From Botryllus schlosseri (lineage: Eukaryota), in the NCBI GenBank assembly GCA_051294905.1, contig CM119376.1, forward strand, positions 1,984,001 to 2,048,000: 64,000 bases of DNA, read 5' to 3'. How positions within the stretch are numbered: position 1 is the first letter of the stretch; every line of letters begins with the position of its first letter. Below the pieces are notes generated by a model, which saw only the letters and a list, made by a program, of their open reading frames with translations, searched no databases and was not told where the DNA came from. Of the stretch, positions 36,560 through 49,300 are shown one piece after another. Both the position numbers and the translations under genes were made by a program.

Positions 36560-39500
36560 AACACGTCGTTCAACCACCGGAGTGATCTGGGATCGCTTGC
36601 CTTAACTGTTCGCCTATAACAGAAAGGCTGCCGTGTGCAACTCTGGTCGAGGTCCTACACGTCGGGATTCCTCGCCACCTCGCTGTAAAGCATCTTCAAA
36701 GCAGCGAGACGAACTGCCACGCCGTCCAAAACAACATCATAAGAAGCGGAAGAAGAGCAACATCAATACCGCTTCAAAAGGACGGTGCAAGATCGACGGC
36801 GAATCGTTGGGAATTAACATCTATATCAATAGAGAGCCGTCGATCTGCAAAGGCGAGGAAAACCCGGGTGTTAACGCGCATTCGTAAGGTAAATTTCGTT
36901 TTTACCGTTCGCGTTAACATACGTGTAGGGCGTAGCAGTAGCGCTGCTGACGCGGGGGTAATCAAGTTCGGCGTGTGTACACAATTACGTCTGGCCTGTA
37001 TCCTAACGCGTTCGCTATTCCTCTCTGCACCCTTAGTTAACCTATATATTGTGTTTGTAATTGTCCGTTGTTATTCGTTTGTATTGTCGCCTTTTCTGTC
37101 CCCTCTAATAGCGAACGCCGGTGCAGGCCTCTTAGTCTTTACTTCCTGTTATTGTTCTAATTCTTATTTCATTACATTCAATTGTATTCGATTCTTGATC
37201 TTGACTGTATTAATATTAACCGTAATAGGTCGCGACTCGGTCACCTTTAGGCATTTAGTCCGCGCAATTTCTTCACGATGGCAAGTGGAAAAACTAGTCC
37301 TCTCGTTGTCCCGTATCACGGTCCATGAACGAGCGCTGATGTCTTGTGTCCGAAACCAAATTGCGGTTTGTCGTTCTCTGCATTTGTTCGATTAGCGGAG
37401 CATTTGGCTTTTTCCACCCCTGTGACAGTCTTAAATGTAGTAATTTTTTTTTCTAATTCGGACCATAAAATAAGCTGTCACTATAGGCGGTACAAGGGCA
37501 CGCGACATCATAGTTGGTTTGCCTGTCCGACTTGTGGAAAGTGTTTTAACGCGGTTCCGAAAGCGAAGGACCATTTTAAATCCAGCCACCCCGAGTCTGC
37601 TATCCCCCTGGATTCGGCTTTTGAACAATCTGGAATCCCTTTGGAAAATTTATTGACTGCTTCAATTAAATGTAAAGGCAGTGATACTAGGTATCCTTGC
37701 CCAGTTACCGGTTGCAATAAACAGGGCTTCCCGTACAAACTGTTGGTTTCGCTCCAGAACACATTTTGAGCAAGCACGGCATCACAAAAAACTTTGCGTG
37801 TGCGGCAGGTGTGACCAATCGACAATTCCTGCGCAGCCAGGTATGATCTCTGCCAAGAACCATTGGTCCGCCTGCTGCCTACGGAGGAGCTGTGTCTGCT
37901 TCCGGTAACTTATCCCCAGCCACGTCCACGACTGTTTCGCGAGTCGACTCGATCTCCCCTATTTCTTCGCGTTCTTTAGTCCCCTTTGCCGTTGACGCAG
38001 CGGAAAGTTCTGCTACTTCTTTTCCCGGTACTATACCGGACCCTGCCTTATCCGTGGCCAATCTTTCATTTTTGTCGGATACCACCTCTGTGATAACCGT
38101 ATCATCTCGACCTTGATCACGGATTTCGAATAATTCACGACGCTCTGTCATTTCTTCTAAAAATTCTAAACATAAAGTAAAGTCCATGAGATTCTCTCCT
38201 TCCTCTCATAGTAATAGCTCCGCCTCTTCCACTACCTCCTCTGGGCCGCGCGACTCATCAACAGTCGTGACGTCGCCAAATTCTTCTGCGCCCCGAACCC
38301 CGTCCCCAATTCTTATTAGTCGATTCCCGGTCCGTAGGCCAGTCACTGGGGCCTTACCTGCCGCCCGTGCCTGGCTTCGGACTGCCGGGGATAGTAGACA
38401 GTCCCTAGGCCGTCGTACCACAACAACTCCAAAAATCGTGGTTTCCCCCCAAGGGATTTTACTCCCTCCCCACCCCAAACGTTAGTGAAGAGTCGTTTGG
38501 CCCCTGTCTCTTCACCAGGCCCTATTCCATCGCTTTCGGAATTGTTTAAAACACCTTTGCCCGGCAGCTCGGGCTCTACTCAAGAGCTCCTTGCCGGGTT
38601 GGACCGGGGAAGTCCCTTCCCCACCACACGCGATGATCTGCAACAGATATCGTCGGCGGGAACGAGTCCGAACATTGTAGACTCGCCTCCCGTCGGTCAG
38701 AGCGTGTCTCCCCCGCGCCCACCAGCGGAAGAGACTCGCTCTGTGACGGCTGAATCAGCGGTCGGCCGCTCCGAAGTTACCGGAGCTGTCGATGGCTGTG
38801 AAAGCCCGACGAGACTGTCTCCTTCGGTAAGTCCACGTGACGAATTAAATTTCGACGTGCCTTCTCCCGAACCGAGCGCACCTCGTGCACAAGTAGATCT
38901 GCGCGAGTTCCGCTCGGAGCTTGCGGACTTGGTGTCCGGATGTCCTCACAACACCGAGGCTTTCGGGCACCTTGAACGTGAGTTGGAGCTCTGGACTGAC
39001 CCTGCCTCTGATTGCAGCCGCCCTCCCGGCCGTAAACGCCCTAGGAATAGATACTCGCGCGAAGCAAAACGGCGTGCAAAGGTCAATCAATTGAATGGCC
39101 AGCGCGAGTGTCGACCTGGGGCAGCACAACATCTACGGTCCGCAATCAGAAGGAAATGGTCAGACAGATCATCGAGGATGATTCTGGCAGTAAACGGTGC
39201 GAAATTCCTGCTGACGTCATCGAGCGGAAATTTCGTGCTGACGCTGCCGCTGCGGTTTCTGATAATGACGCTGCTTTTCCTTGGTGGATGACTCAGCAAA
39301 GTTACCAGGGCGACCTTGCTTCTGCTGTTGATGACGAGCCGATTACTTCTTTAGAGGTAGCGGGAGCACTGGCGACCTTAAACACAAGTAGCTTGCCAGG
39401 CTCCGATGGTCTCACCTATGGATTTTGGAAACGCTTAGACCCCAAGGGAGAAATCCTCTCTGAGCTTTTCGAAATTTGTAGGCGTTGCCGACGTATTCCA

Positions 39501-41880
39501 CTTATGTGGCGCTCGTCGCGGGTAATCCTGATTCCAAAGGACCGCGACGGCGACATGCAAGACGTTGGCAACTGGAGACCCATATCGCTATCCAGGACAC
39601 TGTATAAGATCTACGCGTCCGTAATCGCTCGCCGTCTTCAGAGCAGGGCATCCGATGGAGATGTCATCTCCATGGAGCAAAACGGGTTTGTTCCGCGAGA
39701 GGGGGTCTTCGAGCACGTGTTCATGCTTGAGTCCTTGCTTGCGGATGCCAAGTCGTCAAGGCGGGATATTTATCTTGCCTGACTTGACATCCGCAATGCT
39801 TTTGGTACCGTTCGGCATGGATCCGTGATCGAAGTCCTGAAGCACTTTAACGCCCCGGAGTATCTGATGGAGGTGATGACCGATATTTACGCGTCTAACG
39901 TGTTTTCAGTCGCGACCTGTTCTGGTCCGACTGACCTCATTCCAGCGGGGAAGGGTGTCCGTCAAGGATGCCCTTTATCGGCCATCACCTTCAACGTGGT
40001 CATGGAGGTTCTCCTGCGTGTTGTTGCTGGGCTGCTTCGGAGCAGCTGTTATCGGTTTTCCGCGGCGGATGGCGTCACAGTCAGAGTTCAGGGTTACGCA
40101 GATGACACCTGTCGGTATGCTTCGTCTCGCGTCCAGCTTCAAGCACAATTAGACCTGTGCGATGAATTTTCTCGGTGGTCTGGTATGAAGTTCAAACCCG
40201 CCAAGTGTCGTGTTCTTGCCTTGGGGTTCAAGGGAAGCCGATCGATAGTGGACTCGGCCCCGTTCCGCCTTGATGGTGGCGAGGTCCGGGTCCTCGATCG
40301 TGACTCTTTCTGGCGATACCTGGGCAAGAACATGGGGTACCAGGCAACCGAGAAAGGTGGAAAGGCGCTTAAAACTTTCTAGGCCTATTGTGACAGGCTT
40401 TTTCTGACACATCTCACTTCCTTTCAGAAGCTGCTCGCACTGCAGAGGTTCGTTATTCCAAGAATCCTTTTTCAGTTGAGAATCCGCAAGTTTTTCCGCA
40501 GCGATCTGCGTCGCCTGGATGCGCGTAACCGCACGTTGGTGAAGGCGGAATTCCGCCTCCCTAACAGAGCGTGTCAGCTCTTCTTTCATGCTGGGCTGAC
40601 GATTGGCGGTCTGGGGATCCCCAACCTCTGCTGCGAAGCAGACGTGTTGAGGCTTTCCCAGTCCGTCAAAATGGTCAATTCCACTGACCCCTCTGTGCGA
40701 ACGGTTGCGCGTGGAAGGTTGGCGCTGGTCGTCCGGAGAACTTGCCGAGTCCCAGAGGCGTCGGAGACCCTGACAGTCGAGCTTTTAAACTGCGTGAGTC
40801 TAACAGGGCACGACTCCAGGGCGTACGGAGTCGCCTACGGGCTTTGGACCGAGGTCCGACCCGTTGCTATGCGTCTCGGGGCTCGCTGGTTCGTGACCGA
40901 AGACGGGCTCTATCAGTTGGCTCTAGGCGCCGACTGCTGTGAGGATTTGGGGAGGTTAACCAAATTCCTTCACCTGAAGGTGAACCAACGTTGGTGGATG
41001 GAGCTTCCCGATCAGGGCAAAACTGTGGAGTGCCACAGCCGGTACGGGAGCTCCAATCGCTTCTTCCGGTCTTCCAACGTCCTGACGGCAGTCGAGCGTA
41101 GCTGGATGCTTAAAGCTCGACTGAATCTTCTACCGCTCCGGTCGATCCGGGGTCGGTTTAGAAAACGTGGGGAGCCAAGTGTGGTCTGCTGCAAGTGCGG
41201 ACAGCATACTGAGACCCTGCCCCACGTACTGAACCTCTGCCTGCCAGTGATGGATAGCATCACGAACAGGCACAATTCGGTACTTGGGGTGCTCCTGGAC
41301 TGTATACCAAGCTCTTCTTCTTTTTCCAGATGCGATGTGGACCGCGTTTGCGAGGAGCAGGCCACATTGGCCAACACCCGGCTGAGGCCCGACCTCATCC
41401 TGGCGGATCGTTGCCGGGTCTTAGTCATCGATGTGGTGTGCCCCTTCGAGAATGGAGTAGCCAGTATGGACGCTGCCGTTGCACTGAAACACGCAAAGTA
41501 CAAGGACCTCTGTGAGTCTCTCCGCCTTGCCACGGCCAAGGAGGTGGAGATGCATACGTTCGCGGTCGGGTCCCTGGGGAGTTACCACCCCGGGAACCTG
41601 ACCACCTTACGCGCGATGGGTGTTTCGGTCTTCGAGTCCAGACTGGTCTCCGAGTGAGCCGTGGTCGCTTCTCAGCGCGGCTCTCATCGTGTCTGAAAGG
41701 CTTGGTGTAGTGTACGGGACCACGAGAGGACTTGACTCCCCCTTCACGTGTTCCTTATTTGTTATATGACTGTTGTTATCCGGCATTTAGCTTAATCCGC
41801 CAGCCATCACGGGGTTCGACTGCAGGCAACTAGACACCGGCTTGATTCACGGAACTCCTCCCCAAATTAACATAAAAGGA
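36560..41880 (+). mobile_element. Restriction-like-endonuclease non-LTR retrotransposon (NeSL/Utopia/R2-group), inactivated
   Basis: Single-ORF layout of N-terminal zinc fingers, RT, CCHC and PD-(D/E)xK nuclease. The 5' and 3' boundaries are approximate. Confidence 0.88.
37278..41657 (+). pseudogene. RLE-LINE polyprotein: 3-4 zinc fingers, RT, CCHC, RLE; several stops and frameshifts
   Basis: CPKPNC..F..L.EH, CPTCGKCF..DHF..H, CPVTGC; LPGSDG, NWRPISL, EQNGF, LDIRNAFGTV, GVRQGCPLS, GYADD, YLG; CCKCGQHTETLPHVLNLC, RHN, RPDLIL...IDVVCPFE, KHAKY. Confidence 0.92.
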
Positions 41881-42333
41881 CCCTAGTGTGGTTTTAATTT
41901 TTGATTGTAGTTTTCTGAGCGGTTCCAAATGCTAAGGGGAGGAGTTCCCCCACCACATGAACGATAATTTTTATTTTTGAATTTCATCACCACAATTGTT
42001 AAGATAATGCCTGCAGTCGGACCTCGCCAGTTCGCCCGCTTTCTTTTGTGTTGTTTGTCGGCCCTCACCACCATATATTGTGCGTTTTTGGTGAGGGCCT
42101 TGTGTGTTGGTGTCCCCAGTCCCTGGGCGAACTGACCGTGTCTTCTCTTGCCCATGTCTATTTATTATCGCATTTTTTGTATGTGATTTTCGCCATTTAT
42201 TTATTATAATCTGGAACTTTTTTCCCCACCGCCGCAAATGGTGGGTATTGTTCCGTATTTATGTTCTGCATAAATTTCGAGGTGACCGAAGTCGCGATTA
42301 TATTTACTCATTGTGCACATTTCTTATCCAATC

Positions 42334-42381
42334 GGCCTCGTGGCCTAATGGGTAAGACGTCTGACTTCGAATCAGAAGATT
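42334..42381 (+). tRNA. 5' 48 nt of a tRNA-Arg(TCG)-like sequence; no T-arm or 3' acceptor strand, so not functional
   Basis: GGCCTCGTGGCCTAATGGGTAAGACGTCTGACTTCGAATCAGAAGATT has an A-box D arm and anticodon stem TCTGA-CTTCGAA-TCAGA with a TCG anticodon. Confidence 0.85.
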
Positions 42382-42425
42382 CGGCGGTACACATACTAAT
42401 ATTGGAACAATACAGAGAAGACTTG
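42380..42425 (+). ncRNA. U6: U6 snRNA fragment, 5' part, fused to the tRNA half and split by the Gypsy insertion
   Basis: TTCGGCGGTACACATACTAATATTGGAACAATACAGAGAAGACTTG matches the U6 copy at 24997-25089. Confidence 0.88.
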
Positions 42426-42684
42426 TGTAGCGTCCCTTTCCTGGTCTGGTTCAATAGTCCGATTCCTTCATATACTGCTGATTTGCACTTTATGCAGCCA
42501 CAGACTCCAGTCGTATTATCTTAGTAACATTTAATTAAAAAGCAGCAACTTACTACCGTACTCAGTGCTCACTCCAACCCCAGACCAATCCCGTCGACCG
42601 ACTAACAAAGGAAAGCGCGCGGAAAGTTTCACCAAAAATTTTACAACCGGAAAATATCAAGATGTCAAATACTGGGTTTTCACA
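42426..42684 (-). repeat. Gypsy 3' LTR
   Basis: Direct repeat of 45755-46013; PPT (minus GAGGGGGTAG) adjacent at 42685-42694. Confidence 0.95.
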
Positions 42685-42895
42685 CTACCCCCTCGTATTT
42701 TTGATGGAGATTCTCTTAATAGCAATCGAAATCAATATGGTCGAGCGAACGGAGTTTGCAAGAAAGAAGCAACAACATAAACATACTAAACAAGAGCTAA
42801 ATGCTTAGGGCATCAAATAGAAATCGTTCAAGTTAACGGGACGACGTCACTGACAAGATTCGAAGTCTGCATCCCCGCGGGAAGTATCAGGCATC

Positions 42896-43597
42896 TCAAC
42901 ATCTACATTCTAACCTTCGACCTCCGGATCGGATTTCTTCATCAAGGTTGCGCGAGGTCAGCCTCACGCAAGCAATGTCGCAAGTTGACGACACGTAAAA
43001 CCAGGTTCTTTTTTTTTTCACCAACGTTTGGCTGTATTCTCTATTATTACTGGGGTTACTCCGACAACGAAATTTCGTTTCTGCATCTGTAGTTTTCCGT
43101 GATCTCATTTTCTTCGGTTCTTCTCCCACTGCAGTTTCCGTCTTACTTCGTCTTTTCTCACCCACTTTCTGGGGTTCGACGACTGTGGGTTTTGGAGCAA
43201 CACGTTTTTCTACAATCTTACTACCTCGAGTCTTTCGTTTGACTGCCACCTCACTCTGGGTAGGCTGGCCTTCAATTATCTCACCCCCCGAGGTAATGGT
43301 CCCCGAACTCATACCAGAATTGAGCTGATTGGTCGGCCAATCGACAACGGCCACTTTCAATCTCCTGGATTTTGCTCGTTTCCCAATGTACATCGTCACA
43401 GGCGAGTTCACATGATGCGACAAGGATTGCTGCTTCGGAGTCGTTCCAACAAATCTACGATCGCTTTTGGCAGGTTTCTGACGCTGGACATTTACATTAG
43501 CGGGTTTTGTCTTTTTCTTCGCATTCTTCTTGACAACGTCGGACCAGAGCAGGACCCTGCTCTTGCGTCTTTCCAGACTCTCTCTCGGAATGCCCAT
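42896..43597 (-). CDS. Basic Lys/Arg-rich 233-aa ORF of unknown function downstream of the deleted pol
   Basis: Open frame whose ATG overlaps the upstream stop (TAATG); no domain recognised. Confidence 0.4.
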   Translation of the reverse strand: MGIPRESLERRKSRVLLWSDVVKKNAKKKTKPANVNVQRQKPAKSDRRFVGTTPKQQSLSHHVNSPVTMYIGKRAKSRRLKVAVVDWPTNQLNSGMSSGTITSGGEIIEGQPTQSEVAVKRKTRGSKIVEKRVAPKPTVVEPQKVGEKRRSKTETAVGEEPKKMRSRKTTDAETKFRCRSNPSNNREYSQTLVKKKRTWFYVSSTCDIACVRLTSRNLDEEIRSGGRRLECRC

Positions 43598-44397
43598 TAT
43601 CGCAGAATTGGCCCGGATCTACGTCGGGTGCAACACGGGTTCTCTGCCTTTGTATCGCCAGGAGTTTCCTTGCTGTCAAACTTTGCAGCTACAATTTTCA
43701 TTTCTTCGCAGGAGCCGGTTTTCGGTGTCCGTCGCAATGAGCCTCTCCTCCCCAGCACCGGGGACCCTCCTTCAGACGACGCTCTCTTTACTGGCTGTCC
43801 CGTATGCCTACTTTTGTGCTGTGAATCAGAACTTTCTCTTCTTTCTGTTTTAAACGGAGTATTTTTCTCGTGCAGCAGTGGGATTTCAACATCGTCGTCA
43901 ATGATCACCTGGCAGAAAGGTACCCTGTCATGACTGGTGAGTTTCACTTCTTCTCCTGCGACGTCCAGTATTCCGGAAGAGAGATGCATGACACACTCAT
44001 GACTCTTCAAAAAGTCCATTCCAAGAAGTCCGATTGGCACACCCAAATCCGCTACAACCACCGTCTGTCGAGCCGCCACCAAGCCAACGTTGAGCTCCAC
44101 TTTCACGGTACCAGAGATGTCCAGTGGGTATCCTCCCACCGCATCGAACGAACGCGTACACGGATTCAGAACACTACCAATCGATTCTAGAAGTGATTTA
44201 TCTAGTAATGTCGTACCAGCGCCACTATCCACCATAAACCATATCGATTGAGTATTCACCTCAATTTCAGCATACCAGCTATCTTCCCACTGGATAGCTG
44301 AAATCCATGGTCTCAAAAACAGGTCCATTTTCTTTTCATCATCAACAATCGCAGTAGCAGGCGATGAGGACCTCATGCCTGCTGCATCGCGTTTTTT
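43597..44397 (-). CDS. Pol remnant: aspartic protease fused to an unrecognised tail
   Basis: FMVDSGAGTTLL and GLLGMDFL retropepsin motifs; in the -1 frame relative to gag. Confidence 0.88.
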   Translation of the reverse strand, partial: KKRDAAGMRSSSPATAIVDDEKKMDLFLRPWISAIQWEDSWYAEIEVNTQSIWFMVDSGAGTTLLDKSLLESIGSVLNPCTRSFDAVGGYPLDISGTVKVELNVGLVAARQTVVVADLGVPIGLLGMDFLKSHECVMHLSSGILDVAGEEVKLTSHDRVPFCQVIIDDDVEIPLLHEKNTPFKTERRESSDSQHKSRHTGQPVKRASSEGGSPVLGRRGSLRRTPKTGSCEEMKIVAAKFDSKETPGDTKAENPCCTRRRSGPILR

Positions 44398-45678
44398 GAT
44401 ACAGGGTCGTTCGGCATTGTAAAACCGAGTGTTGGGCAGTCCCTCCTCATGTGCCCTTCTTCACGACAGTTGAAGCAACGGCGAGCTCCTGGCGGTACAT
44501 TTGGGCATTGCCTGGCTCAATGACCATGCTGTTTACATAGCGGACAAGGTTTGGTCGGCGTATTCTGTTGTACCAGCTTCAGCAGCAAATCCTTGAGCTC
44601 ACTCAGAGTATCATCCATCTTGGGAATCGGCTCATCCGACGACGAATGACATTCGTTCCCAGTCACAGAAGCGATGCCAGCACGCGGCTTGCCCTCTCTC
44701 TTAACAGTATTGTCCATAGCGTCGAGGTAATAGTATTGAGTGGCGAGTGCTATTGCATCTTCTAATGACTTCGGCTGCTGCATGGCAACAAGCTTGCGCA
44801 TTTCGTTGTCAGCAATTCCCCTGAAAAACTGCGTCTTCAACATCACGTCCCGCCCAGGCAAATCCAGCGATGGAAATGCTTTTGTTGCCAGTAACTTTAA
44901 AGCGGCTCCATACTCCATGGGAGTTTCGGCATTGTTCCGTACCCTATTGTCAAACATTGCCCGGTAGGCCATTTCTCCCCCCGTGGGATTGAAGAAATTC
45001 TGCATATGCGCCACAACTATCGCATAGTTGTTCCGATCTGACGGTGCTAGTTCAGAGAGTAAGTCAAGAGCTTGCCCTAGCATACAAGTTGCTAATTCGT
45101 AGCCCTTTTCATAGTCATCCCATCTGTTATACTCGGCCACCGCTTCAAAATGGCATATATAACTATTCCAAGAGCTAGTTCCGTCAAACGGTTGAGGCCG
45201 TTTAGGTCTATAACGACCAGAATTATTGGTCAAATGTTGCTCCATGACTGGGGCTAAATTTCTCGACATAGAAATACCATCACTTACGGCTGACTTTCCT
45301 GATGACGGACTGACTGGTTCCGGGAATTTTTCAACAACCGGCTCTGACGAGGTCACAATTTCCTGTTCTTGCTCAACCGACTCACGTTCAGTAGTCGCAG
45401 CGGCAGGTTGAGCTGGGCAGTGTAGCGCCGGTTACCGTCCGAATAAAAGTCATAATCTCGGCTAGTCCTTGTTCAAGACCATCAATTCTATTACTCAGTC
45501 GAGCTTCCGTTTTTAACAGCCTTTCTTCCTGTAGTGCAATCTTTCTGTTTAGATATTCCTTCAATTCTCCCACTGCTCTACTGACGAAGGCAGAATATTG
45601 TTCTTCACTTTCCCGATCGTTTGCCTCATGCTTCTCAATAGATTCGCGCTGGGTCTTTCTACTTCTGGTTTTTGTCAT
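44373..45678 (-). pseudogene. Gypsy gag (capsid + two CCHC), one frameshift and one W>stop
   Basis: PQPFDGTSSWNSY..HFEAVAEYNRW, QFFRGI, CPLCKQHGH*ARQC, CFNCREEGHMRRDC. Confidence 0.9.
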
Positions 45679-45732
45679 CCTTTCGGTACCGTAGCGTCGC
45701 CGTTATTCCAATAGCACAAATCAGTACAGTAT

Positions 45733-45750
45733 GTCCTGGCGTGCTCGCCA
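45733..45750 (-). promoter_or_regulatory. Primer-binding site, tRNA-Arg-like
   Basis: Minus strand TGGCGAGCACGCCAGGAC lies 4 nt from the 5' LTR. Its complement ...TCCTGGCGTGCTCGCCA resembles the tRNA-Arg(ACG) 3' end. Confidence 0.75.
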
Positions 45751-45754
45751 AATT

Positions 45755-46013
45755 TGTAGCGTCCCTTTCCTGGTCTGGTTCAATAGTCCGATTCCTTCAT
45801 ATACTGCTGATTTGCACTTTATGCAGCCACAGACTCCAGTCGTATTATCTTAGTAACATTTAATTAAAAAGCAGCAACTTACTACCGTACTCAGTGCTCA
45901 CTCCAACCCCAGACCAATCCCGTCGACCGACTAACAAAGGAAAGCGCGCGGCAAGTTTCACCAAAAATTTTACAACCGGAAAATATCAAGATGTCAAATA
46001 CTGGGTTTTCACA
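45755..46013 (-). repeat. Gypsy 5' LTR
   Basis: Direct repeat of 42426-42684. Confidence 0.95.
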
Positions 46014-46042
46014 CTTGCATGGCCCCTGCGCAAGGATGACAC
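46014..46042 (+). ncRNA. U6: U6 snRNA fragment, continuation after the Gypsy element
   Basis: CTTGCATGGCCCCTGCGCAAGGATGACAC. Confidence 0.88.
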
Positions 46043-46354
46043 ATGTGCACATTTCCTTTGATGGTATGATGCCGAATAAAATATTACAAAAAAATGTTAT
46101 CGGTAAGTTATGTGGTAAGAAATCAAATTAGCGGTACGCCATGGGAAAAGGTATGAGAAACACTGAATTAAATGAAGAGACGCCAGAGGATAAACGTGAC
46201 CTTGCTGCTGCACTTGCACATGTCGATTTGGAGGCGCACAGTTATACCGTACGCCGACTACTCTCTGAATTACACGAGCAAATGCCCGTTCTTTGGTGAT
46301 AGCTTTTTAATCATACGGCGAAATTCAAGAGTGTTTTTGTGTGTGCCTGACAAT

Positions 46355-49300
46355 GGACGATTTTCATTTTTGCTCACGAGCGCCGCCATTATGGTCAAGG
46401 GATGGCGGTCGGTGAATCTTGCTTCGTGCGCGCAGATGGCAGTTTTGGAGTTCGTTTCGCTATTTATCTACGTGGGTTGTAGATATGATGCAGTTAAGGG
46501 TATCGATGCTAAATTAAGGTAAATAGCATGTTCATTATTGGCATGGAATCTTTTTTAGCGAAAAACAGCCGATTTCAGCCGTTTTACGAAGTTTTTCGGT
46601 ACTGGTTTGTGACAACTCACGAGAAGTCGAGAACATCATGGCATATCAGCTTGACTTCTAAGATAATAGTGCATATATATTTGTAAAATGGCTGTTCATA
46701 ACGGATATATTTATGTAATTTAAATTAGTGAATATATTCCTGTAATACAGTTTTATGTTTGATATGGACAGGTTGATTTCTTGCAAAGAACTTTTACGAT
46801 AAACAATCTATATTCTTATACTGTGTTGCCTGTGAGATAACAGACATGAATGCAGATGCGGGATCGTGGACTGTGACAGGAAGATCACACTATGATTGTT
46901 GTGTTCTGAAATGCAACAACGACTCAAGAAAGGCTATGAATCTACCTTTTCACATGAAGAAATGGATATAAAAAATTAGATCTGTAGTCGGGTTGAATTT
47001 TGAAGTGAGTAAATTACCAGAAGTGTTTCATTCCGATCATACTCTCTCCTGTTCTAACGTGATAATGTTGCTATTGATTTTTGTCTAGATAACTGGAAGT
47101 ACACGTGTTTGTGGGGAGCATTTTAATGACGAGGATTATAGAATGAAGTCTTGCGGACGTCACTATTTGAAAATTGGAGCAGTTCCTGGGATATTCAAGT
47201 GGACGAAGTCAACAACACCATCTAGAAGGGTGTTGCACAGGCATCAGAGGTGAGATCAATGTAAACTGACATGATATGAGGCTACAAATTACTTTCAATT
47301 CTTAACAATGACTGGTACATGGTAGATAGGTGAGTGAGAGGATTCCAATATTATTTAAAACTATTTCGCGAACTCGGCACATCAATTGGGTGGAAGGGAA
47401 AGTCCAATAACTACATGATACTGCCTTTCCAACAATATGTAGACTGTAGAGTGCATTGCAGCCAAAAATATAGCTTATACAACTCAGTATCAGGAAATAT
47501 GTCCAAGGTGTGCTTGGCCATTCTATAATCGCGTAAAAGTATTTCTGGTTATTATGATTAGTGCAGCAAAATCCCGAGCTCAAGCCCAAGCTGCTGTATC
47601 ACCTGAACAGCGACAAACATTATGACCGAACATTATTAGTGATATTAGTGTGTGGCAAGCTGACAGACATTTTATCCAATTCGGGTGACTGTTTACTTTA
47701 AATTTTTTTCTGCACTTGGTTATGCCACCAACACTAATTATTTATTGAATAACTGCCATTGTTAGTTGATCGTAAATATACCGTAACTATAAATGTTTTC
47801 ATTTCTGTCGGCATGTTATTAATGCATCTAACTGTATTTGTAGTGGACATCATACTCCAGAAGAAATTCCTGGTCCAAGTAGCACTGATCAGATTCCACA
47901 TCTACAACAGCCATTGTTGGATCATGCGTATTGTGAAGAAAAATCATCTAAAGCAAAGGGAATAATTCAGGATTTAAGTAATGAGCTGGAGAAGCTGATT
48001 TTGTGCACGATTAAAGGCATCTGATGATACATGTTTCCGTATTATTCTGGATTTTCAAGTTATGGATTGGTTTTGAAGTTTTTGATATAGTCTCATCAAC
48101 AGCTGCAACTGTTCCACTTTTATCAGCTGTTAAAAATTATCTCAGAAGTGATAGATTGAAGAATTTCAAGCAAAGGCAAATTCAAAAACTCTGCCATTGC
48201 AAGACGAACCGTTTTCATTTGTTAGTCGGATTCACCAAGGCTTTGGAGTGAAAGACCTTGGTGTTCGATTCAACTTGTCTACCGCATCTGTTAGCGGGTT
48301 ATCGATAACTTAGGCAAATTTTTCATATTTTACTCTTGAGAAATTGACAATTTGGGTGAGTAGAGAGAAAATTAGAGAACATATGCCCCGATCCTTCAGA
48401 TGAGGAAATTATGGTATCACACATGTTAATAATGCTTGATTGGTATCGCGCCATAGTGGCTACATACATACAAGCCTGATTGGTATCGCGCCACATGGCA
48501 ATAGTGGGTACATAAACACAAGTCCAGTCTGCTTTATATCGCTAATCCTTTCATTTTTTATCTGCTCAATAAACAAAACAAGTAACATTCAACAGTTCTG
48601 TTGGGCATTGTATATTGACAAATTTATCGGCCATTTGCTAGGAGCTAGCCAGTTATGCACAAAGCTATCCGGTACACAACTGGGAGTGAGCGGCTTGGTG
48701 TCCACCGCGGAGAACAAAGTCTTAACCCAGGTAAAATGAAAGATCTCCTGGTCGCCATGACCCTTTCATATCCCGCAAATGGGCAAAGGTGTCCTTGACA
48801 GTTCTAGTTTTATCAGATTTCGAAATATCCTTGTCGATCATCGATGGTCCGTGTCGTTGTGGCTGGTCGATGAGGCACATCTGCACCTGGAACATAAAAT
48901 ACTGCAGCAGTATCTGGTGCACTGGACAGTGGACAATCATCGTTCTGGGGCAGTGCAACTGGGAACATTGCAACGACAGCAATTTTTAGTCATATTGTAA
49001 AGCTTCGTATTTGTTTACTACTAAACAATTTGTTGACTAGTTATTTGATTCAACAATTTTTTGTTTTGACGATATGCAATATCAAGCATTGACCCCAACA
49101 ACACTGCTGATACTGACATTCTCAAACTCATCACGATCACAGATGATACTTGCAAAGTCACGAAGTCTAATTCTCAAAGCCAGTTAGGAGCCTATAATTT
49201 GAGTGCTTGAATAAATACCAAGGACCTATGCTAGTATAAATTACAACATGCCTCTAAAATCTCATATGTAAGATTCAGCGAATAATTTATAGCCTTTGCT

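What the first reader, a model, noticed from the sequence alone, without database searches (positions are those of the whole stretch)
42312..46055. tRNA-Arg 5' half fused to U6 snRNA, bracketed by a 12-bp direct repeat
Seen: removing the Gypsy element leaves TTATCCAATC + 48 nt of tRNA-Arg(TCG) + U6 from about nt 9 to GATGACAC, joined at a 2-nt TT overlap. TGTGCACATTTC flanks the whole (42312-42323, 46044-46055). Known: U6/L1 chimeras arise by RNA ligation or template switching, snRNA-derived SINEs (SINEU) exist, and YURE RLE elements target tRNA-Arg. I do not recall a tRNA-head/U6-body chimera. Inference: this is a LINE-mediated retrocopy of two Pol III RNAs, either a one-off template switch or an undescribed SINE-like family. 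The missing B box argues against autonomous Pol III transcription.
Basis: partly seen in the sequence, partly recalled or inferred. Interest (0 to 1): 0.7.

Follow-up and report, generated by a model that had tools for sequence, protein, structure and literature searches.

The report
One-off tRNA-Arg/U6 chimeric retrocopy
A single dead DNA copy of two small cellular RNAs, the front of a tRNA-Arg joined to the middle of U6, was pasted into an old jumping gene in what earlier notes call a sea-squirt genome and later split by another jumping gene; it is a real but ordinary by-product of reverse transcription, not a new repeat family.

Summary
Without the 3.6-kb LTR element (42426-46013) and one copy of its 4-bp duplication CTTG, the sequence reads: 12-mer, 10 nt, tRNA-Arg(TCG) nt 1-48, U6 nt 9-80 sharing TT at the joint, then the same 12-mer.

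- **True target-site duplication.** The insert lies in the 3' UTR of a decayed LINE. Ten of 11 paralogous copies of that LINE run straight across the site with one copy of the 12-mer.
- **Single copy.** Both joints, tRNA/U6 and U6/flank, occur once in the 495-Mb genome. None of about 44 U6-like loci inspected has a tRNA-Arg partner. The SINE-family branch is therefore rejected.
- **Local context.** The genome holds other U6 retrocopies with 11-19 bp duplications, with or without an A tail.
- **Best reading.** This is a tailless, LINE-type (target-primed) retrocopy. Synthesis began inside U6 at nt 80, left U6 in the loop of its 5' hairpin and continued on tRNA-Arg from its variable loop.
- **Unresolved.** Template switching and prior RNA ligation cannot be told apart.
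- **The 10 nt.** They match no tRNA-Arg leader in the assembly. Their last 7 nt equal U6 nt 96-102, so they may be a third segment.
- **Function.** There is no B box and no sign of expression.

It is a new member of a known kind, of modest interest.

The parts
42312..42323 (+). Left copy of the 12-bp target-site duplication (TGTGCACATTTC); part of the host LINE 3' UTR
   Evidence: present once in 10 of 11 paralogous LINE copies
42324..42333 (+). 10 nt TTATCCAATC at the 5' joint: filler, or a third template. Its last 7 nt equal U6 nt 96-102, just before the U tail
   Evidence: No tRNA-Arg gene in the assembly has this leader within 3 mismatches. The 7-nt match to U6 has P about 0.02. Other U6 retrocopies end at nt 102 (L072, L073, L081)
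42334..42381 (+). tRNA-Arg(TCG) nt 1-48: acceptor 5' strand, D arm with A box, anticodon arm and variable loop; no T arm, so no B box
   Evidence: 2 mismatches to the genomic genes
42380..42425 (+). U6 snRNA nt 9-54; the first two bases (TT) are shared with the tRNA part; the last four (CTTG) were duplicated by the LTR insertion
42426..46013 (-). Later insertion: non-autonomous LTR element. LTRs at 42426-42684 and 45755-46013 differ by 1 base. Minus-strand ORFs with an aspartic-protease domain only. A G-rich polypurine-like run (GAGGGGG, minus strand) lies beside 42685 and a TGG-starting primer-binding-like site lies beside 45754
46014..46017 (+). Second copy of the 4-bp duplication (CTTG) made by the LTR element
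   Evidence: five other family copies also have 4-bp duplications, in unrelated flanks
46018..46043 (+). U6 snRNA nt 55-80; the 3' 27 nt of U6 and its U tail are absent; no A tail
46044..46055 (+). Right copy of the 12-bp target-site duplication
39108..42311 (+). Host: decayed non-LTR retrotransposon (RT fragments at 39108-40382, then the C-terminal region and 3' UTR) into which the chimera inserted
46056..46095 (+). Last ~40 nt of the host LINE 3' UTR, with its AATAAA-like motif and A-rich tail

Best explanation
This is a single, dead, tailless chimeric retropseudogene.

**Proposed sequence of events**
1. A LINE-type endonuclease and reverse transcriptase nicked the 3' UTR of an older LINE copy, between CTCAT and TGTGCA on the top strand.
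2. DNA synthesis started inside a U6 snRNA at about nt 80, without a poly(A) tail.
3. U6 was copied down to the UUCG loop of its 5' hairpin (nt 9-10).
4. Synthesis then continued on a tRNA-Arg(TCG) molecule from its variable loop (nt 48) to nt 1.
5. The switch between RNAs arose either by template switching at a 2-nt UU overlap or because the two RNA fragments had already been ligated.
6. A further 10 nt were added. They are possibly 7 nt copied from the 3' end of a U6 that had lost its U tail, plus 3 filler bases.
7. Second-strand cleavage 12 bp away produced the 12-bp duplication.
8. Much later, a 3.6-kb non-autonomous LTR element landed by chance in the U6 part.

**Shown:** the composition, the joints, the true target-site duplication, single-copy status and the order of the two insertions.

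**Inferred:** the enzyme, the direction of synthesis and how the RNAs were joined.

The copy has no B box, no U6 promoter and no terminator, so it is inert.
For: **Insertion with a true duplication**
- The 12-mer directly abuts both ends and occurs nowhere else in the window.
- Ten of 11 paralogs of the host LINE are continuous across the site with one 12-mer homolog. They carry no tRNA or U6 there.

**Source RNAs and age**
- Both RNA parts match this genome's own genes at about 95%.
- The host LINE copy is about 12% from its paralog consensus. This makes the insert look younger (binomial P about 0.007-0.015).

**Same process elsewhere in this genome**
- U6 copies with 11-19 bp duplications exist. 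L061, L066, L072 and L073 are 3'-truncated with no A tail. L062 has an A tail.
- 5' ends of U6 copies cluster within the 5' hairpin, at nt 4-15.
- L063 and L068 show multi-part chains of small-RNA pieces on element 5' ends.

**Breakpoints**
- Both lie in loops: the U6 UUCG loop and the tRNA variable loop.

**Literature**
- 3'-truncated, tailless, TSD-flanked snRNA and tRNA retropseudogenes are attributed to internal priming by LINE-1 (PMC4476161; PMC5322556).
- tRNA-half/LINE-1 chimeras are described in PMC11838501.
- RtcB ligation of U6 to other RNAs is described in PMC6789731.
Against: - No LINE sequence, A tail or L1-type TT/AAAA nick site accompanies the insert, so the enzyme is not identified.
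- No base complementarity is visible between the nicked target and U6 at the 3' joint, unlike many mammalian tailless copies.
- The 2-nt overlap would arise by chance 1 time in 16, so it barely favours template switching over ligation.
- No orthologous or allelic empty site was available. The empty-site evidence is paralogous.
- The age contrast depends on a consensus of mixed subfamilies and on only 119 nt.
Confidence: 0.82

Rival explanations
1. The insert arose during the host LINE's own reverse transcription. After copying the last ~57 nt of LINE RNA, the enzyme hopped to U6, then to tRNA-Arg, then back to the LINE RNA 12 nt downstream of where it had left. On this reading the 12-mer repeat is a re-alignment product, not a target-site duplication.
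For: The insert has the same orientation as the LINE and lies only about 45 nt from its 3' end. Serial hops between small RNAs are seen on element ends in this genome (L063, L068).
Against: - It needs three hops, with a return to within 12 nt of the departure point and no homology to guide it.
- The 12-bp length fits the 11-19 bp duplications of free-standing U6 retrocopies here.
- The insert appears younger than the LINE copy.
- No other copy of the LINE family carries any such insert.
Confidence: 0.07
2. It is a member of an undescribed SINE-like family with a tRNA-Arg head and a U6 body. It would use the LINE tail lying just downstream.
For: The layout resembles a SINE: a tRNA A-box head, then a body, then a 57-nt LINE 3' tail with an A-rich end.
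Against: - The tRNA/U6 joint, the leader/tRNA joint and the U6/LINE-tail joint are each single-copy in 495 Mb.
- None of about 44 U6-like loci inspected has this partner.
- The B box is absent.
- The LINE tail belongs to the host copy, whose body continues upstream.
Confidence: 0.02
3. It is a DNA-level accident. Pieces of a tRNA gene and a U6 gene (or their cDNAs) were captured as filler during repair of a chromosome break, or were joined by deletion between neighbouring genes.
For: The 10 unexplained nucleotides and the lack of an A tail are also seen in filler DNA at repaired breaks.
Against: - A clean 12-bp duplication of the target, confirmed by paralogous empty sites, is the mark of staggered nicking. 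Blunt break repair does not produce it.
- No gene-flank sequence (promoter, leader or trailer) of any tRNA-Arg or U6 gene is present.
- The paralogs show no tRNA or U6 gene at this site.
Confidence: 0.04

Closest known systems
Tailless (3'-truncated) snRNA and tRNA retropseudogenes (Schmitz 2004 as cited in PMC4476161; Noll 2015, PMC5322556; Doucet 2015, PMC4476161)
   Same: A small Pol III RNA was copied from an internal start point. There is no oligo(A). The copy is flanked by a duplication of about 8-30 bp, is dispersed, and is dead on arrival. Several plain U6 examples of this kind exist in the same genome.
   Different: Here the copy does not end at or near the U6 5' end but continues into a second RNA, tRNA-Arg. 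No complementarity is visible between target and RNA at the 3' joint. The host appears to be a tunicate, not a mammal, and the responsible LINE is unknown.
Bipartite and tripartite chimeric retrogenes made by LINE template switching (Buzdin-type U6/L1, U3/L1 and 5S/L1 chimeras; the Magnaporthe tripartite pseudogene, PMC2104539)
   Same: Copies of unrelated cellular RNAs are fused head to tail in one orientation. They were inserted as one unit inside a single target-site duplication, with short or no overlap at the joint.
   Different: In the classical cases the 3' partner is a LINE, Alu or mRNA 3' end with poly(A), and the 5' partner is usually full-length U6. Here there is no LINE or poly(A) part. 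U6 is the 3' partner and is cut at both ends. The 5' partner is a tRNA fragment.
tRNA-half/LINE-1 chimeric insertions (PMC11838501)
   Same: A 5' tRNA fragment of roughly half length is incorporated into a TSD-flanked chimeric insertion. This suggests that cleaved tRNA fragments serve as templates.
   Different: In those cases the tRNA is joined to LINE-1, mostly in antisense (twin priming), and is typically cut near nt 37. Here it is in sense, joined to U6, and cut at nt 48 in the variable loop.
RtcB-ligated U6/L1 chimeric RNAs (PMC6789731)
   Same: Two RNAs may have been joined before reverse transcription. Both breakpoints here lie in loops, where endonucleases leave the 2',3'-cyclic phosphate and 5'-OH ends that RtcB joins.
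   Different: In the known pathway the natural cyclic-phosphate 3' end of full-length U6 is the donor, so U6 is the 5' partner. Here U6 is downstream and lacks its 3' end. Ligation was not tested.

Membership tests
Tailless retropseudogene (3'-truncated small-RNA retrocopy) | Copy of a small RNA truncated at its 3' end, with no oligo(A) tail | tested here: met
   U6 stops at nt 79/80 of 107 and is followed directly by the 12-mer; no A run
Tailless retropseudogene (3'-truncated small-RNA retrocopy) | Flanked by a target-site duplication, with an empty site showing one copy | tested here: met
   12-bp exact repeat; 10 of 11 paralogous LINE copies have one 12-mer and no insert. These are paralogous, not orthologous, empty sites
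Tailless retropseudogene (3'-truncated small-RNA retrocopy) | Truncation point in a single-stranded segment of the RNA | tested here: inconclusive
   The single-sequence fold of U6 is not better than shuffles (z = -0.72). From general knowledge, nt 80 lies just 3' of the stretch that pairs with U4. The minus-strand U4 hit reflects that complementarity
Tailless retropseudogene (3'-truncated small-RNA retrocopy) | Short complementarity between the nicked target and the RNA at the 3' joint | tested here: not met
   No shared bases between U6 nt 80 onward and the start of the 12-mer (read)
Chimeric retrogene by LINE template switching (Buzdin type) | Two or more unrelated RNA copies fused in the same orientation inside one duplication | tested here: met
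   tRNA-Arg nt 1-48 and U6 nt 9-80, both on the + strand, lie between the two 12-mers
Chimeric retrogene by LINE template switching (Buzdin type) | The 3' partner is a LINE, SINE or mRNA 3' end with poly(A) | tested here: not met
   The 3' partner is an internal U6 fragment. The LINE tail downstream belongs to the host copy
Chimeric retrogene by LINE template switching (Buzdin type) | L1-type nick site (TT/AAAA on the top strand) | tested here: not met
   The top strand reads CTCAT/TGTGCA. The enzyme here need not be L1
SINE | Many dispersed copies sharing the same internal joints | tested here: not met
   All three joints are single-copy in the genome
SINE | Internal Pol III promoter with both an A box and a B box | tested here: not met
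   The A-box region is present in the D arm. The T arm with the B box (present in the genomic genes) is missing
RtcB-type U6/X ligation chimera | Full-length U6 with its U tail as the 5' partner, joined at its 3' end | tested here: not met
   U6 is the 3' partner and lacks nt 81-107. Only a 7-nt match to U6 nt 96-102 lies upstream of the tRNA, without the U tail
Ty3/Gypsy LTR retrotransposon (the interrupting element) | pol with RT, RNase H and integrase in Gypsy order | tested here: not met
   Only an aspartic-protease domain was found in the minus-strand ORFs. The element is a 3.6-kb non-autonomous family. LTRs with TG...CA ends and a 4-bp duplication are confirmed

The most novel reading that the evidence does not exclude
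The insert may be a three-part chain: U6 nt 96-102, then tRNA-Arg nt 1-48, then U6 nt 9-80. It would have been made by serial hops of a tunicate LINE reverse transcriptase among free Pol III RNA fragments, with no LINE RNA involved at any point. Together with the U6/tRNA-like/SL and U6/A-tail/U1/SL chains seen elsewhere in this genome, it would mark a reverse transcriptase unusually prone to end-to-end jumping between small nuclear RNAs. By accident the insert also reproduces a SINE layout (tRNA head, body, LINE tail), so it would be a SINE precursor that never took off.
Probability: 0.3. Interest if true: 0.4.

Novelty: new member of a known kind. Interest (0 to 1): 0.3.

Why it matters
On its own this is one dead pseudogene. 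Its value is as a clean, well-bounded record of how a non-mammalian LINE enzyme treats cellular RNAs.
- Priming was internal, on U6, without poly(A).
- Synthesis left U6 in its 5' hairpin loop.
- It continued on a tRNA fragment.
- Everything lies inside a duplication that can be verified against paralogous empty sites.

Chimeric retrocopies have been studied mainly in mammals and a few fungi. A chimera of two small RNAs with no LINE part is an uncommon form. This genome also holds many other snRNA chimeras and snRNA-targeting elements. It would therefore suit a systematic survey of template switching against RNA ligation.

Tried and rejected
1. **SINE family.** Whole-genome searches with the left half of the insert, the leader+tRNA pattern with up to 3 mismatches and the U6/LINE-tail joint found only the locus itself. 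Rejected.
2. **Pre-tRNA leader.** None of the 27 tRNA-Arg loci inspected has TTATCCAATC upstream, and the pattern search found no other site. Not supported.
3. **U6-targeted LTR element.** Five other copies of the LTR family sit in unrelated flanks with 4-bp duplications. The hit in U6 is chance.
4. **Public reads.**
   - The DNA runs are short Logan contigs.
   - The joints they show are paralogs: other LINE copies for 42323 to 46069, and ordinary U6 copies for 42421 to 46020.
   - No allele without the LTR element or without the insert was seen.
   - One bulk RNA-seq run gave 5 partial reads, all attributable to real U6.
   - This is no evidence either way on polymorphism or expression.
5. 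**Other small-RNA pieces beside U6 copies.** Rfam on 20 U6 loci at E <= 0.5 found only U6, and ARAGORN found no intact tRNA next to 27 U6 loci. The tRNA-like and U1-like pieces in L063 and L068 were seen by eye only.
6. **Priming by complementarity.** I looked for pairing between the nicked target and U6 at the 3' joint and found none.
7. **U6 fold.** It is not better than shuffles, so it supports only the 5' hairpin, which is well known.

A majority consensus of a 664-nt stretch of the host LINE's 3' region was computed inside a script to measure divergence only. It was not printed or kept.


Full report
**What is in the sequence**

Reading 42100-42700 and 45700-46300 shows the following, left to right on the + strand:
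- TGTGCACATTTC at 42312-42323;
- TTATCCAATC at 42324-42333;
- 48 nt of a tRNA at 42334-42381;
- U6-like sequence up to 42425;
- an LTR element;
- more U6-like sequence at 46018-46043;
- TGTGCACATTTC again at 46044-46055.

The 12-mer occurs only at these two places in the window. The chance expectation is 0.03, and no shuffle reached two matches (also D8). Rfam detects both U6 pieces and the partial tRNA below its gathering scores, as fragments should be. ARAGORN finds no intact tRNA in the window.

**Identity of the two RNA parts**

The window is G000:C6:1984001-2048000 of a 495-Mb eukaryotic genome. Earlier notes of this scan call it a sea squirt; I did not test that.

*tRNA part.*
- The genome's tRNA-Arg(TCG) genes are 73 nt (ARAGORN).
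- The fragment equals their nt 1-48 with two changes, at positions 19 and 24.
- It includes the D arm with the A box, the anticodon arm and the variable loop.
- It lacks the T arm and therefore the B box.

*U6 part.*
- The genome's U6 is 107 nt, with identical copies at L056, L057 and L058.
- Once the LTR element and one CTTG are removed, the U6 part equals nt 9-80 with five changes: A29T, G38A, T51C, A53T and G80A.
- Two of these, G38A and G80A, are G-to-A changes at CpG.
- The tRNA ends in TT (nt 47-48) and the U6 part begins with TT (nt 9-10), so the joint has a 2-nt overlap.
- U6 nt 9-12 form the UUCG loop of the 5' hairpin.

Both breakpoints therefore lie in loops.

**The interrupting element**

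- Direct repeats at 42426 and 45755 differ at one position.
- Comparison with five other copies fixes the LTR ends as TG...CA, 259 nt. Every copy has a 4-bp duplication, here CTTG, and the flanks of the other copies are unrelated to U6.
- The ORFs lie on the minus strand, and only an aspartic-protease domain is detectable.
- Most of the roughly ten genomic copies have the same 3.3-kb LTR spacing, so this is a short non-autonomous family.
- 'Gypsy' is not established, and the hit inside U6 is coincidental.
- One difference in 261 aligned LTR positions marks it as the youngest event at this locus.

**Is the 12-mer a real target-site duplication?**

- The left flank is the 3' part of a repeat with at least 40 matches in the genome at 76-89% identity.
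- Upstream ORFs carry reverse-transcriptase fragments, so the host is a decayed LINE on the + strand.
- I joined the window's flanks, keeping one 12-mer, and aligned them to 11 paralogs.
- Ten of the 11 are continuous across the site, with a single homolog of the 12-mer (mostly TGTGCATATTTC). They then run about 45 nt further to an AATAAA-like motif and an A-rich tail.
- The eleventh, L034, departs at that point into another element.
- No paralog has tRNA or U6 sequence there.

This is the empty-site test, done with paralogs. The 142-bp block is an insertion that duplicated 12 bp of its target.

**Single copy or family?**

- A genome search with 42312-42425 returned hits covering either the tRNA part or the U6 part. 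None spanned the joint except the locus itself.
- The leader+tRNA pattern, allowing three mismatches, is unique.
- The U6/LINE-tail joint is unique.
- I inspected 30 U6 loci with flanks and 14 more. None has a tRNA-Arg partner.

The SINE-family branch is rejected.

**Context in this genome**

U6-derived sequence is abundant. Apart from the intact genes, the copies fall into these groups:
- Copies with 11-19 bp duplications. L061, L066, L072 and L073 are 3'-truncated without an A tail. L062 has an A tail.
- L065 and L068 have A tails, but no flanking duplication was detected for them.
- Copies whose 5' ends fall within the 5' hairpin, at nt 4-15.
- Copies ending at nt 100-102, that is, lacking only the U tail: L069, L072, L073, L074 and L081.
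- Chains of small-RNA pieces on the 5' end of an element that begins with a spliced-leader-like sequence:
  - L063 reads U6 nt 15-105, then a tRNA-like piece, then the element.
  - L068 reads U6 nt 7-95, then A18, then the first ~25 nt of U1, then the element.

Retrocopying of U6 with 11-19 bp duplications, internal priming and hopping between small RNAs all recur here. The finding fits that background.

**Relative ages**

- The host LINE copy differs from the consensus of its 11 paralogs at 81 of 656 positions, or 12.3%.
- The insert differs from its source genes at 6 of 119 positions, or 7 of 120 counting G80A.
- If the insert were as old as the LINE copy, so few changes would be unlikely (binomial P = 0.007-0.015).
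- The test weakens if the LINE figure is inflated by subfamily structure (P = 0.04-0.08 at 10%).

This modestly favours a later, separate insertion over co-formation with the LINE.

**The 10 nucleotides at the 5' joint**

- No tRNA-Arg gene in the assembly has this leader, so a pre-tRNA leader is not supported.
- Similar unexplained bases lie between duplication and U6 in L066 and L072.
- The last 7 nt, TCCAATC, equal U6 nt 96-102, the last bases before the U tail.
- A match of 7 nt or more to U6 arises in about 2% of random 10-mers.
- Several U6 retrocopies in this genome end at nt 102 (L072, L073, L081).
- A hop from the tRNA 5' end onto the 3' end of a tail-less U6, followed by early termination, is therefore plausible.

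I put this three-part reading at about 0.3.

**Mechanism**

*Shown:* one block of two or three RNA-derived pieces in one orientation; a true 12-bp duplication; no A tail; loop-located breakpoints; a later LTR insertion.

*Inferred from the known biology of target-primed reverse transcription:*
1. The bottom strand was nicked at the left edge of the duplication.
2. Synthesis ran from U6 nt 80 towards its 5' end.
3. The enzyme then moved on to the tRNA, and perhaps afterwards to a second U6.
4. The top strand was cut 12 bp downstream.

This matches the published class of tailless or 3'-truncated small-RNA retropseudogenes. Those are TSD-flanked, truncated in single-stranded segments and attributed to direct priming on the RNA (PMC4476161 section 8; PMC5322556). 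Here a switch to a second template is added.

Two ways of joining the RNAs remain open:
- **Template switching.** It is favoured slightly by the 2-nt overlap and by the clustering of U6 5' ends in the hairpin.
- **Ligation of two endonuclease fragments before copying.** RtcB is known to join U6 to other RNAs (PMC6789731), and tRNA halves occur in LINE-1 chimeras (PMC11838501).

The responsible LINE is not identified. The nick site CTCAT/TGTGCA is not the L1 consensus.

**Function**

None is expected. There is no B box, no U6 upstream promoter and no terminator. The block is now split by 3.6 kb. One bulk RNA-seq run gave only five partial reads attributable to real U6. That is not evidence of silence for a small RNA.

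**Reads**

Public DNA runs are kept as short contigs. They showed only paralog joints, so they give no information on polymorphism.

**Comparison and verdict**

- The closest known kinds are tailless snRNA/tRNA retropseudogenes and Buzdin-type chimeric retrogenes.
- It differs from the first in being chimeric.
- It differs from the second in having no LINE or poly(A) partner, and in having U6, cut at both ends, as the 3' partner.
- It is not a SINE and not a canonical U6/L1 chimera.
- I file it as a new member of a known kind. It is real, well documented and of modest interest (0.3).

Earlier notes of this scan already flagged other snRNA chimeras and snRNA-targeting elements in this genome.

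Noticed in passing
window 24997-25101 (+) (= L071 1501-1605): A second U6 retrocopy in the window: U6 nt 4-95 followed by a short A-rich run (AAATAATA). It is flanked by a 6-bp repeat, CCAGAC, and sits inside a LINE ORF2-like region.
   Followed up: partly
L075 (G000:C1:25891415-25891524), L076, L077, L078, L083, L084, L099: U6 nt 1-74 (nt 1-64 in L083) is joined to the same foreign end, ACCTGCGG..TTCTCTGTTGG. L075 has the same upstream flank as the intact U6 genes L057 and L058 in the same cluster. An element therefore inserts site-specifically into real U6 genes. Its end contains the complement of the U6 ACAGAGA box.
   Followed up: partly
L063 rc 1507-1720; L068 1503-1665: Multi-part chains sit on the 5' end of an abundant element that begins with a spliced-leader-like sequence (GAGTATTTGGTTGTATTAAG|GT). 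L063 reads U6 nt 15-105, then an ~85-nt tRNA-like piece, then the element. L068 reads U6 nt 7-95, then A18, then the U1 5' end (ATACTTACCTG...), then the element.
   Followed up: partly
L061 and L066: Two U6 copies (nt 4-~97 and nt 2-90) have 12-14 bp duplications. They sit at the homologous position of the same repeat family; both are followed by CTATAGACAACC. Either the same site was hit twice, or one old insertion was amplified with its carrier.
   Followed up: no
L082, L098, L102; L085, L101, L105, L106, L108; L103, L104, L109: Three separate repeat families each carry a decayed U6-like segment. The second has ACTGAGA in place of ACAGAGA.
   Followed up: no
G000:C1:29.25-29.33 Mb (L007-L026): A large tandem cluster of tRNA-Arg genes, with TCG and ACG anticodons interleaved about 0.7-1.2 kb apart. 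It is the likely source pool of the tRNA part.
   Followed up: no
window 46088-46355: Directly after the host LINE's tail, a different repeat family begins, with more than 40 copies at 73-87% identity. The region is a stack of nested and abutting elements.
   Followed up: no
L034 and L035 (paralogs of the host LINE): The spliced-leader-like element abuts the host LINE family twice: in L035 after the LINE tail, and in L034 exactly at the point where the window's insert sits. The coincidence of site in L034 is unexplained.
   Followed up: no
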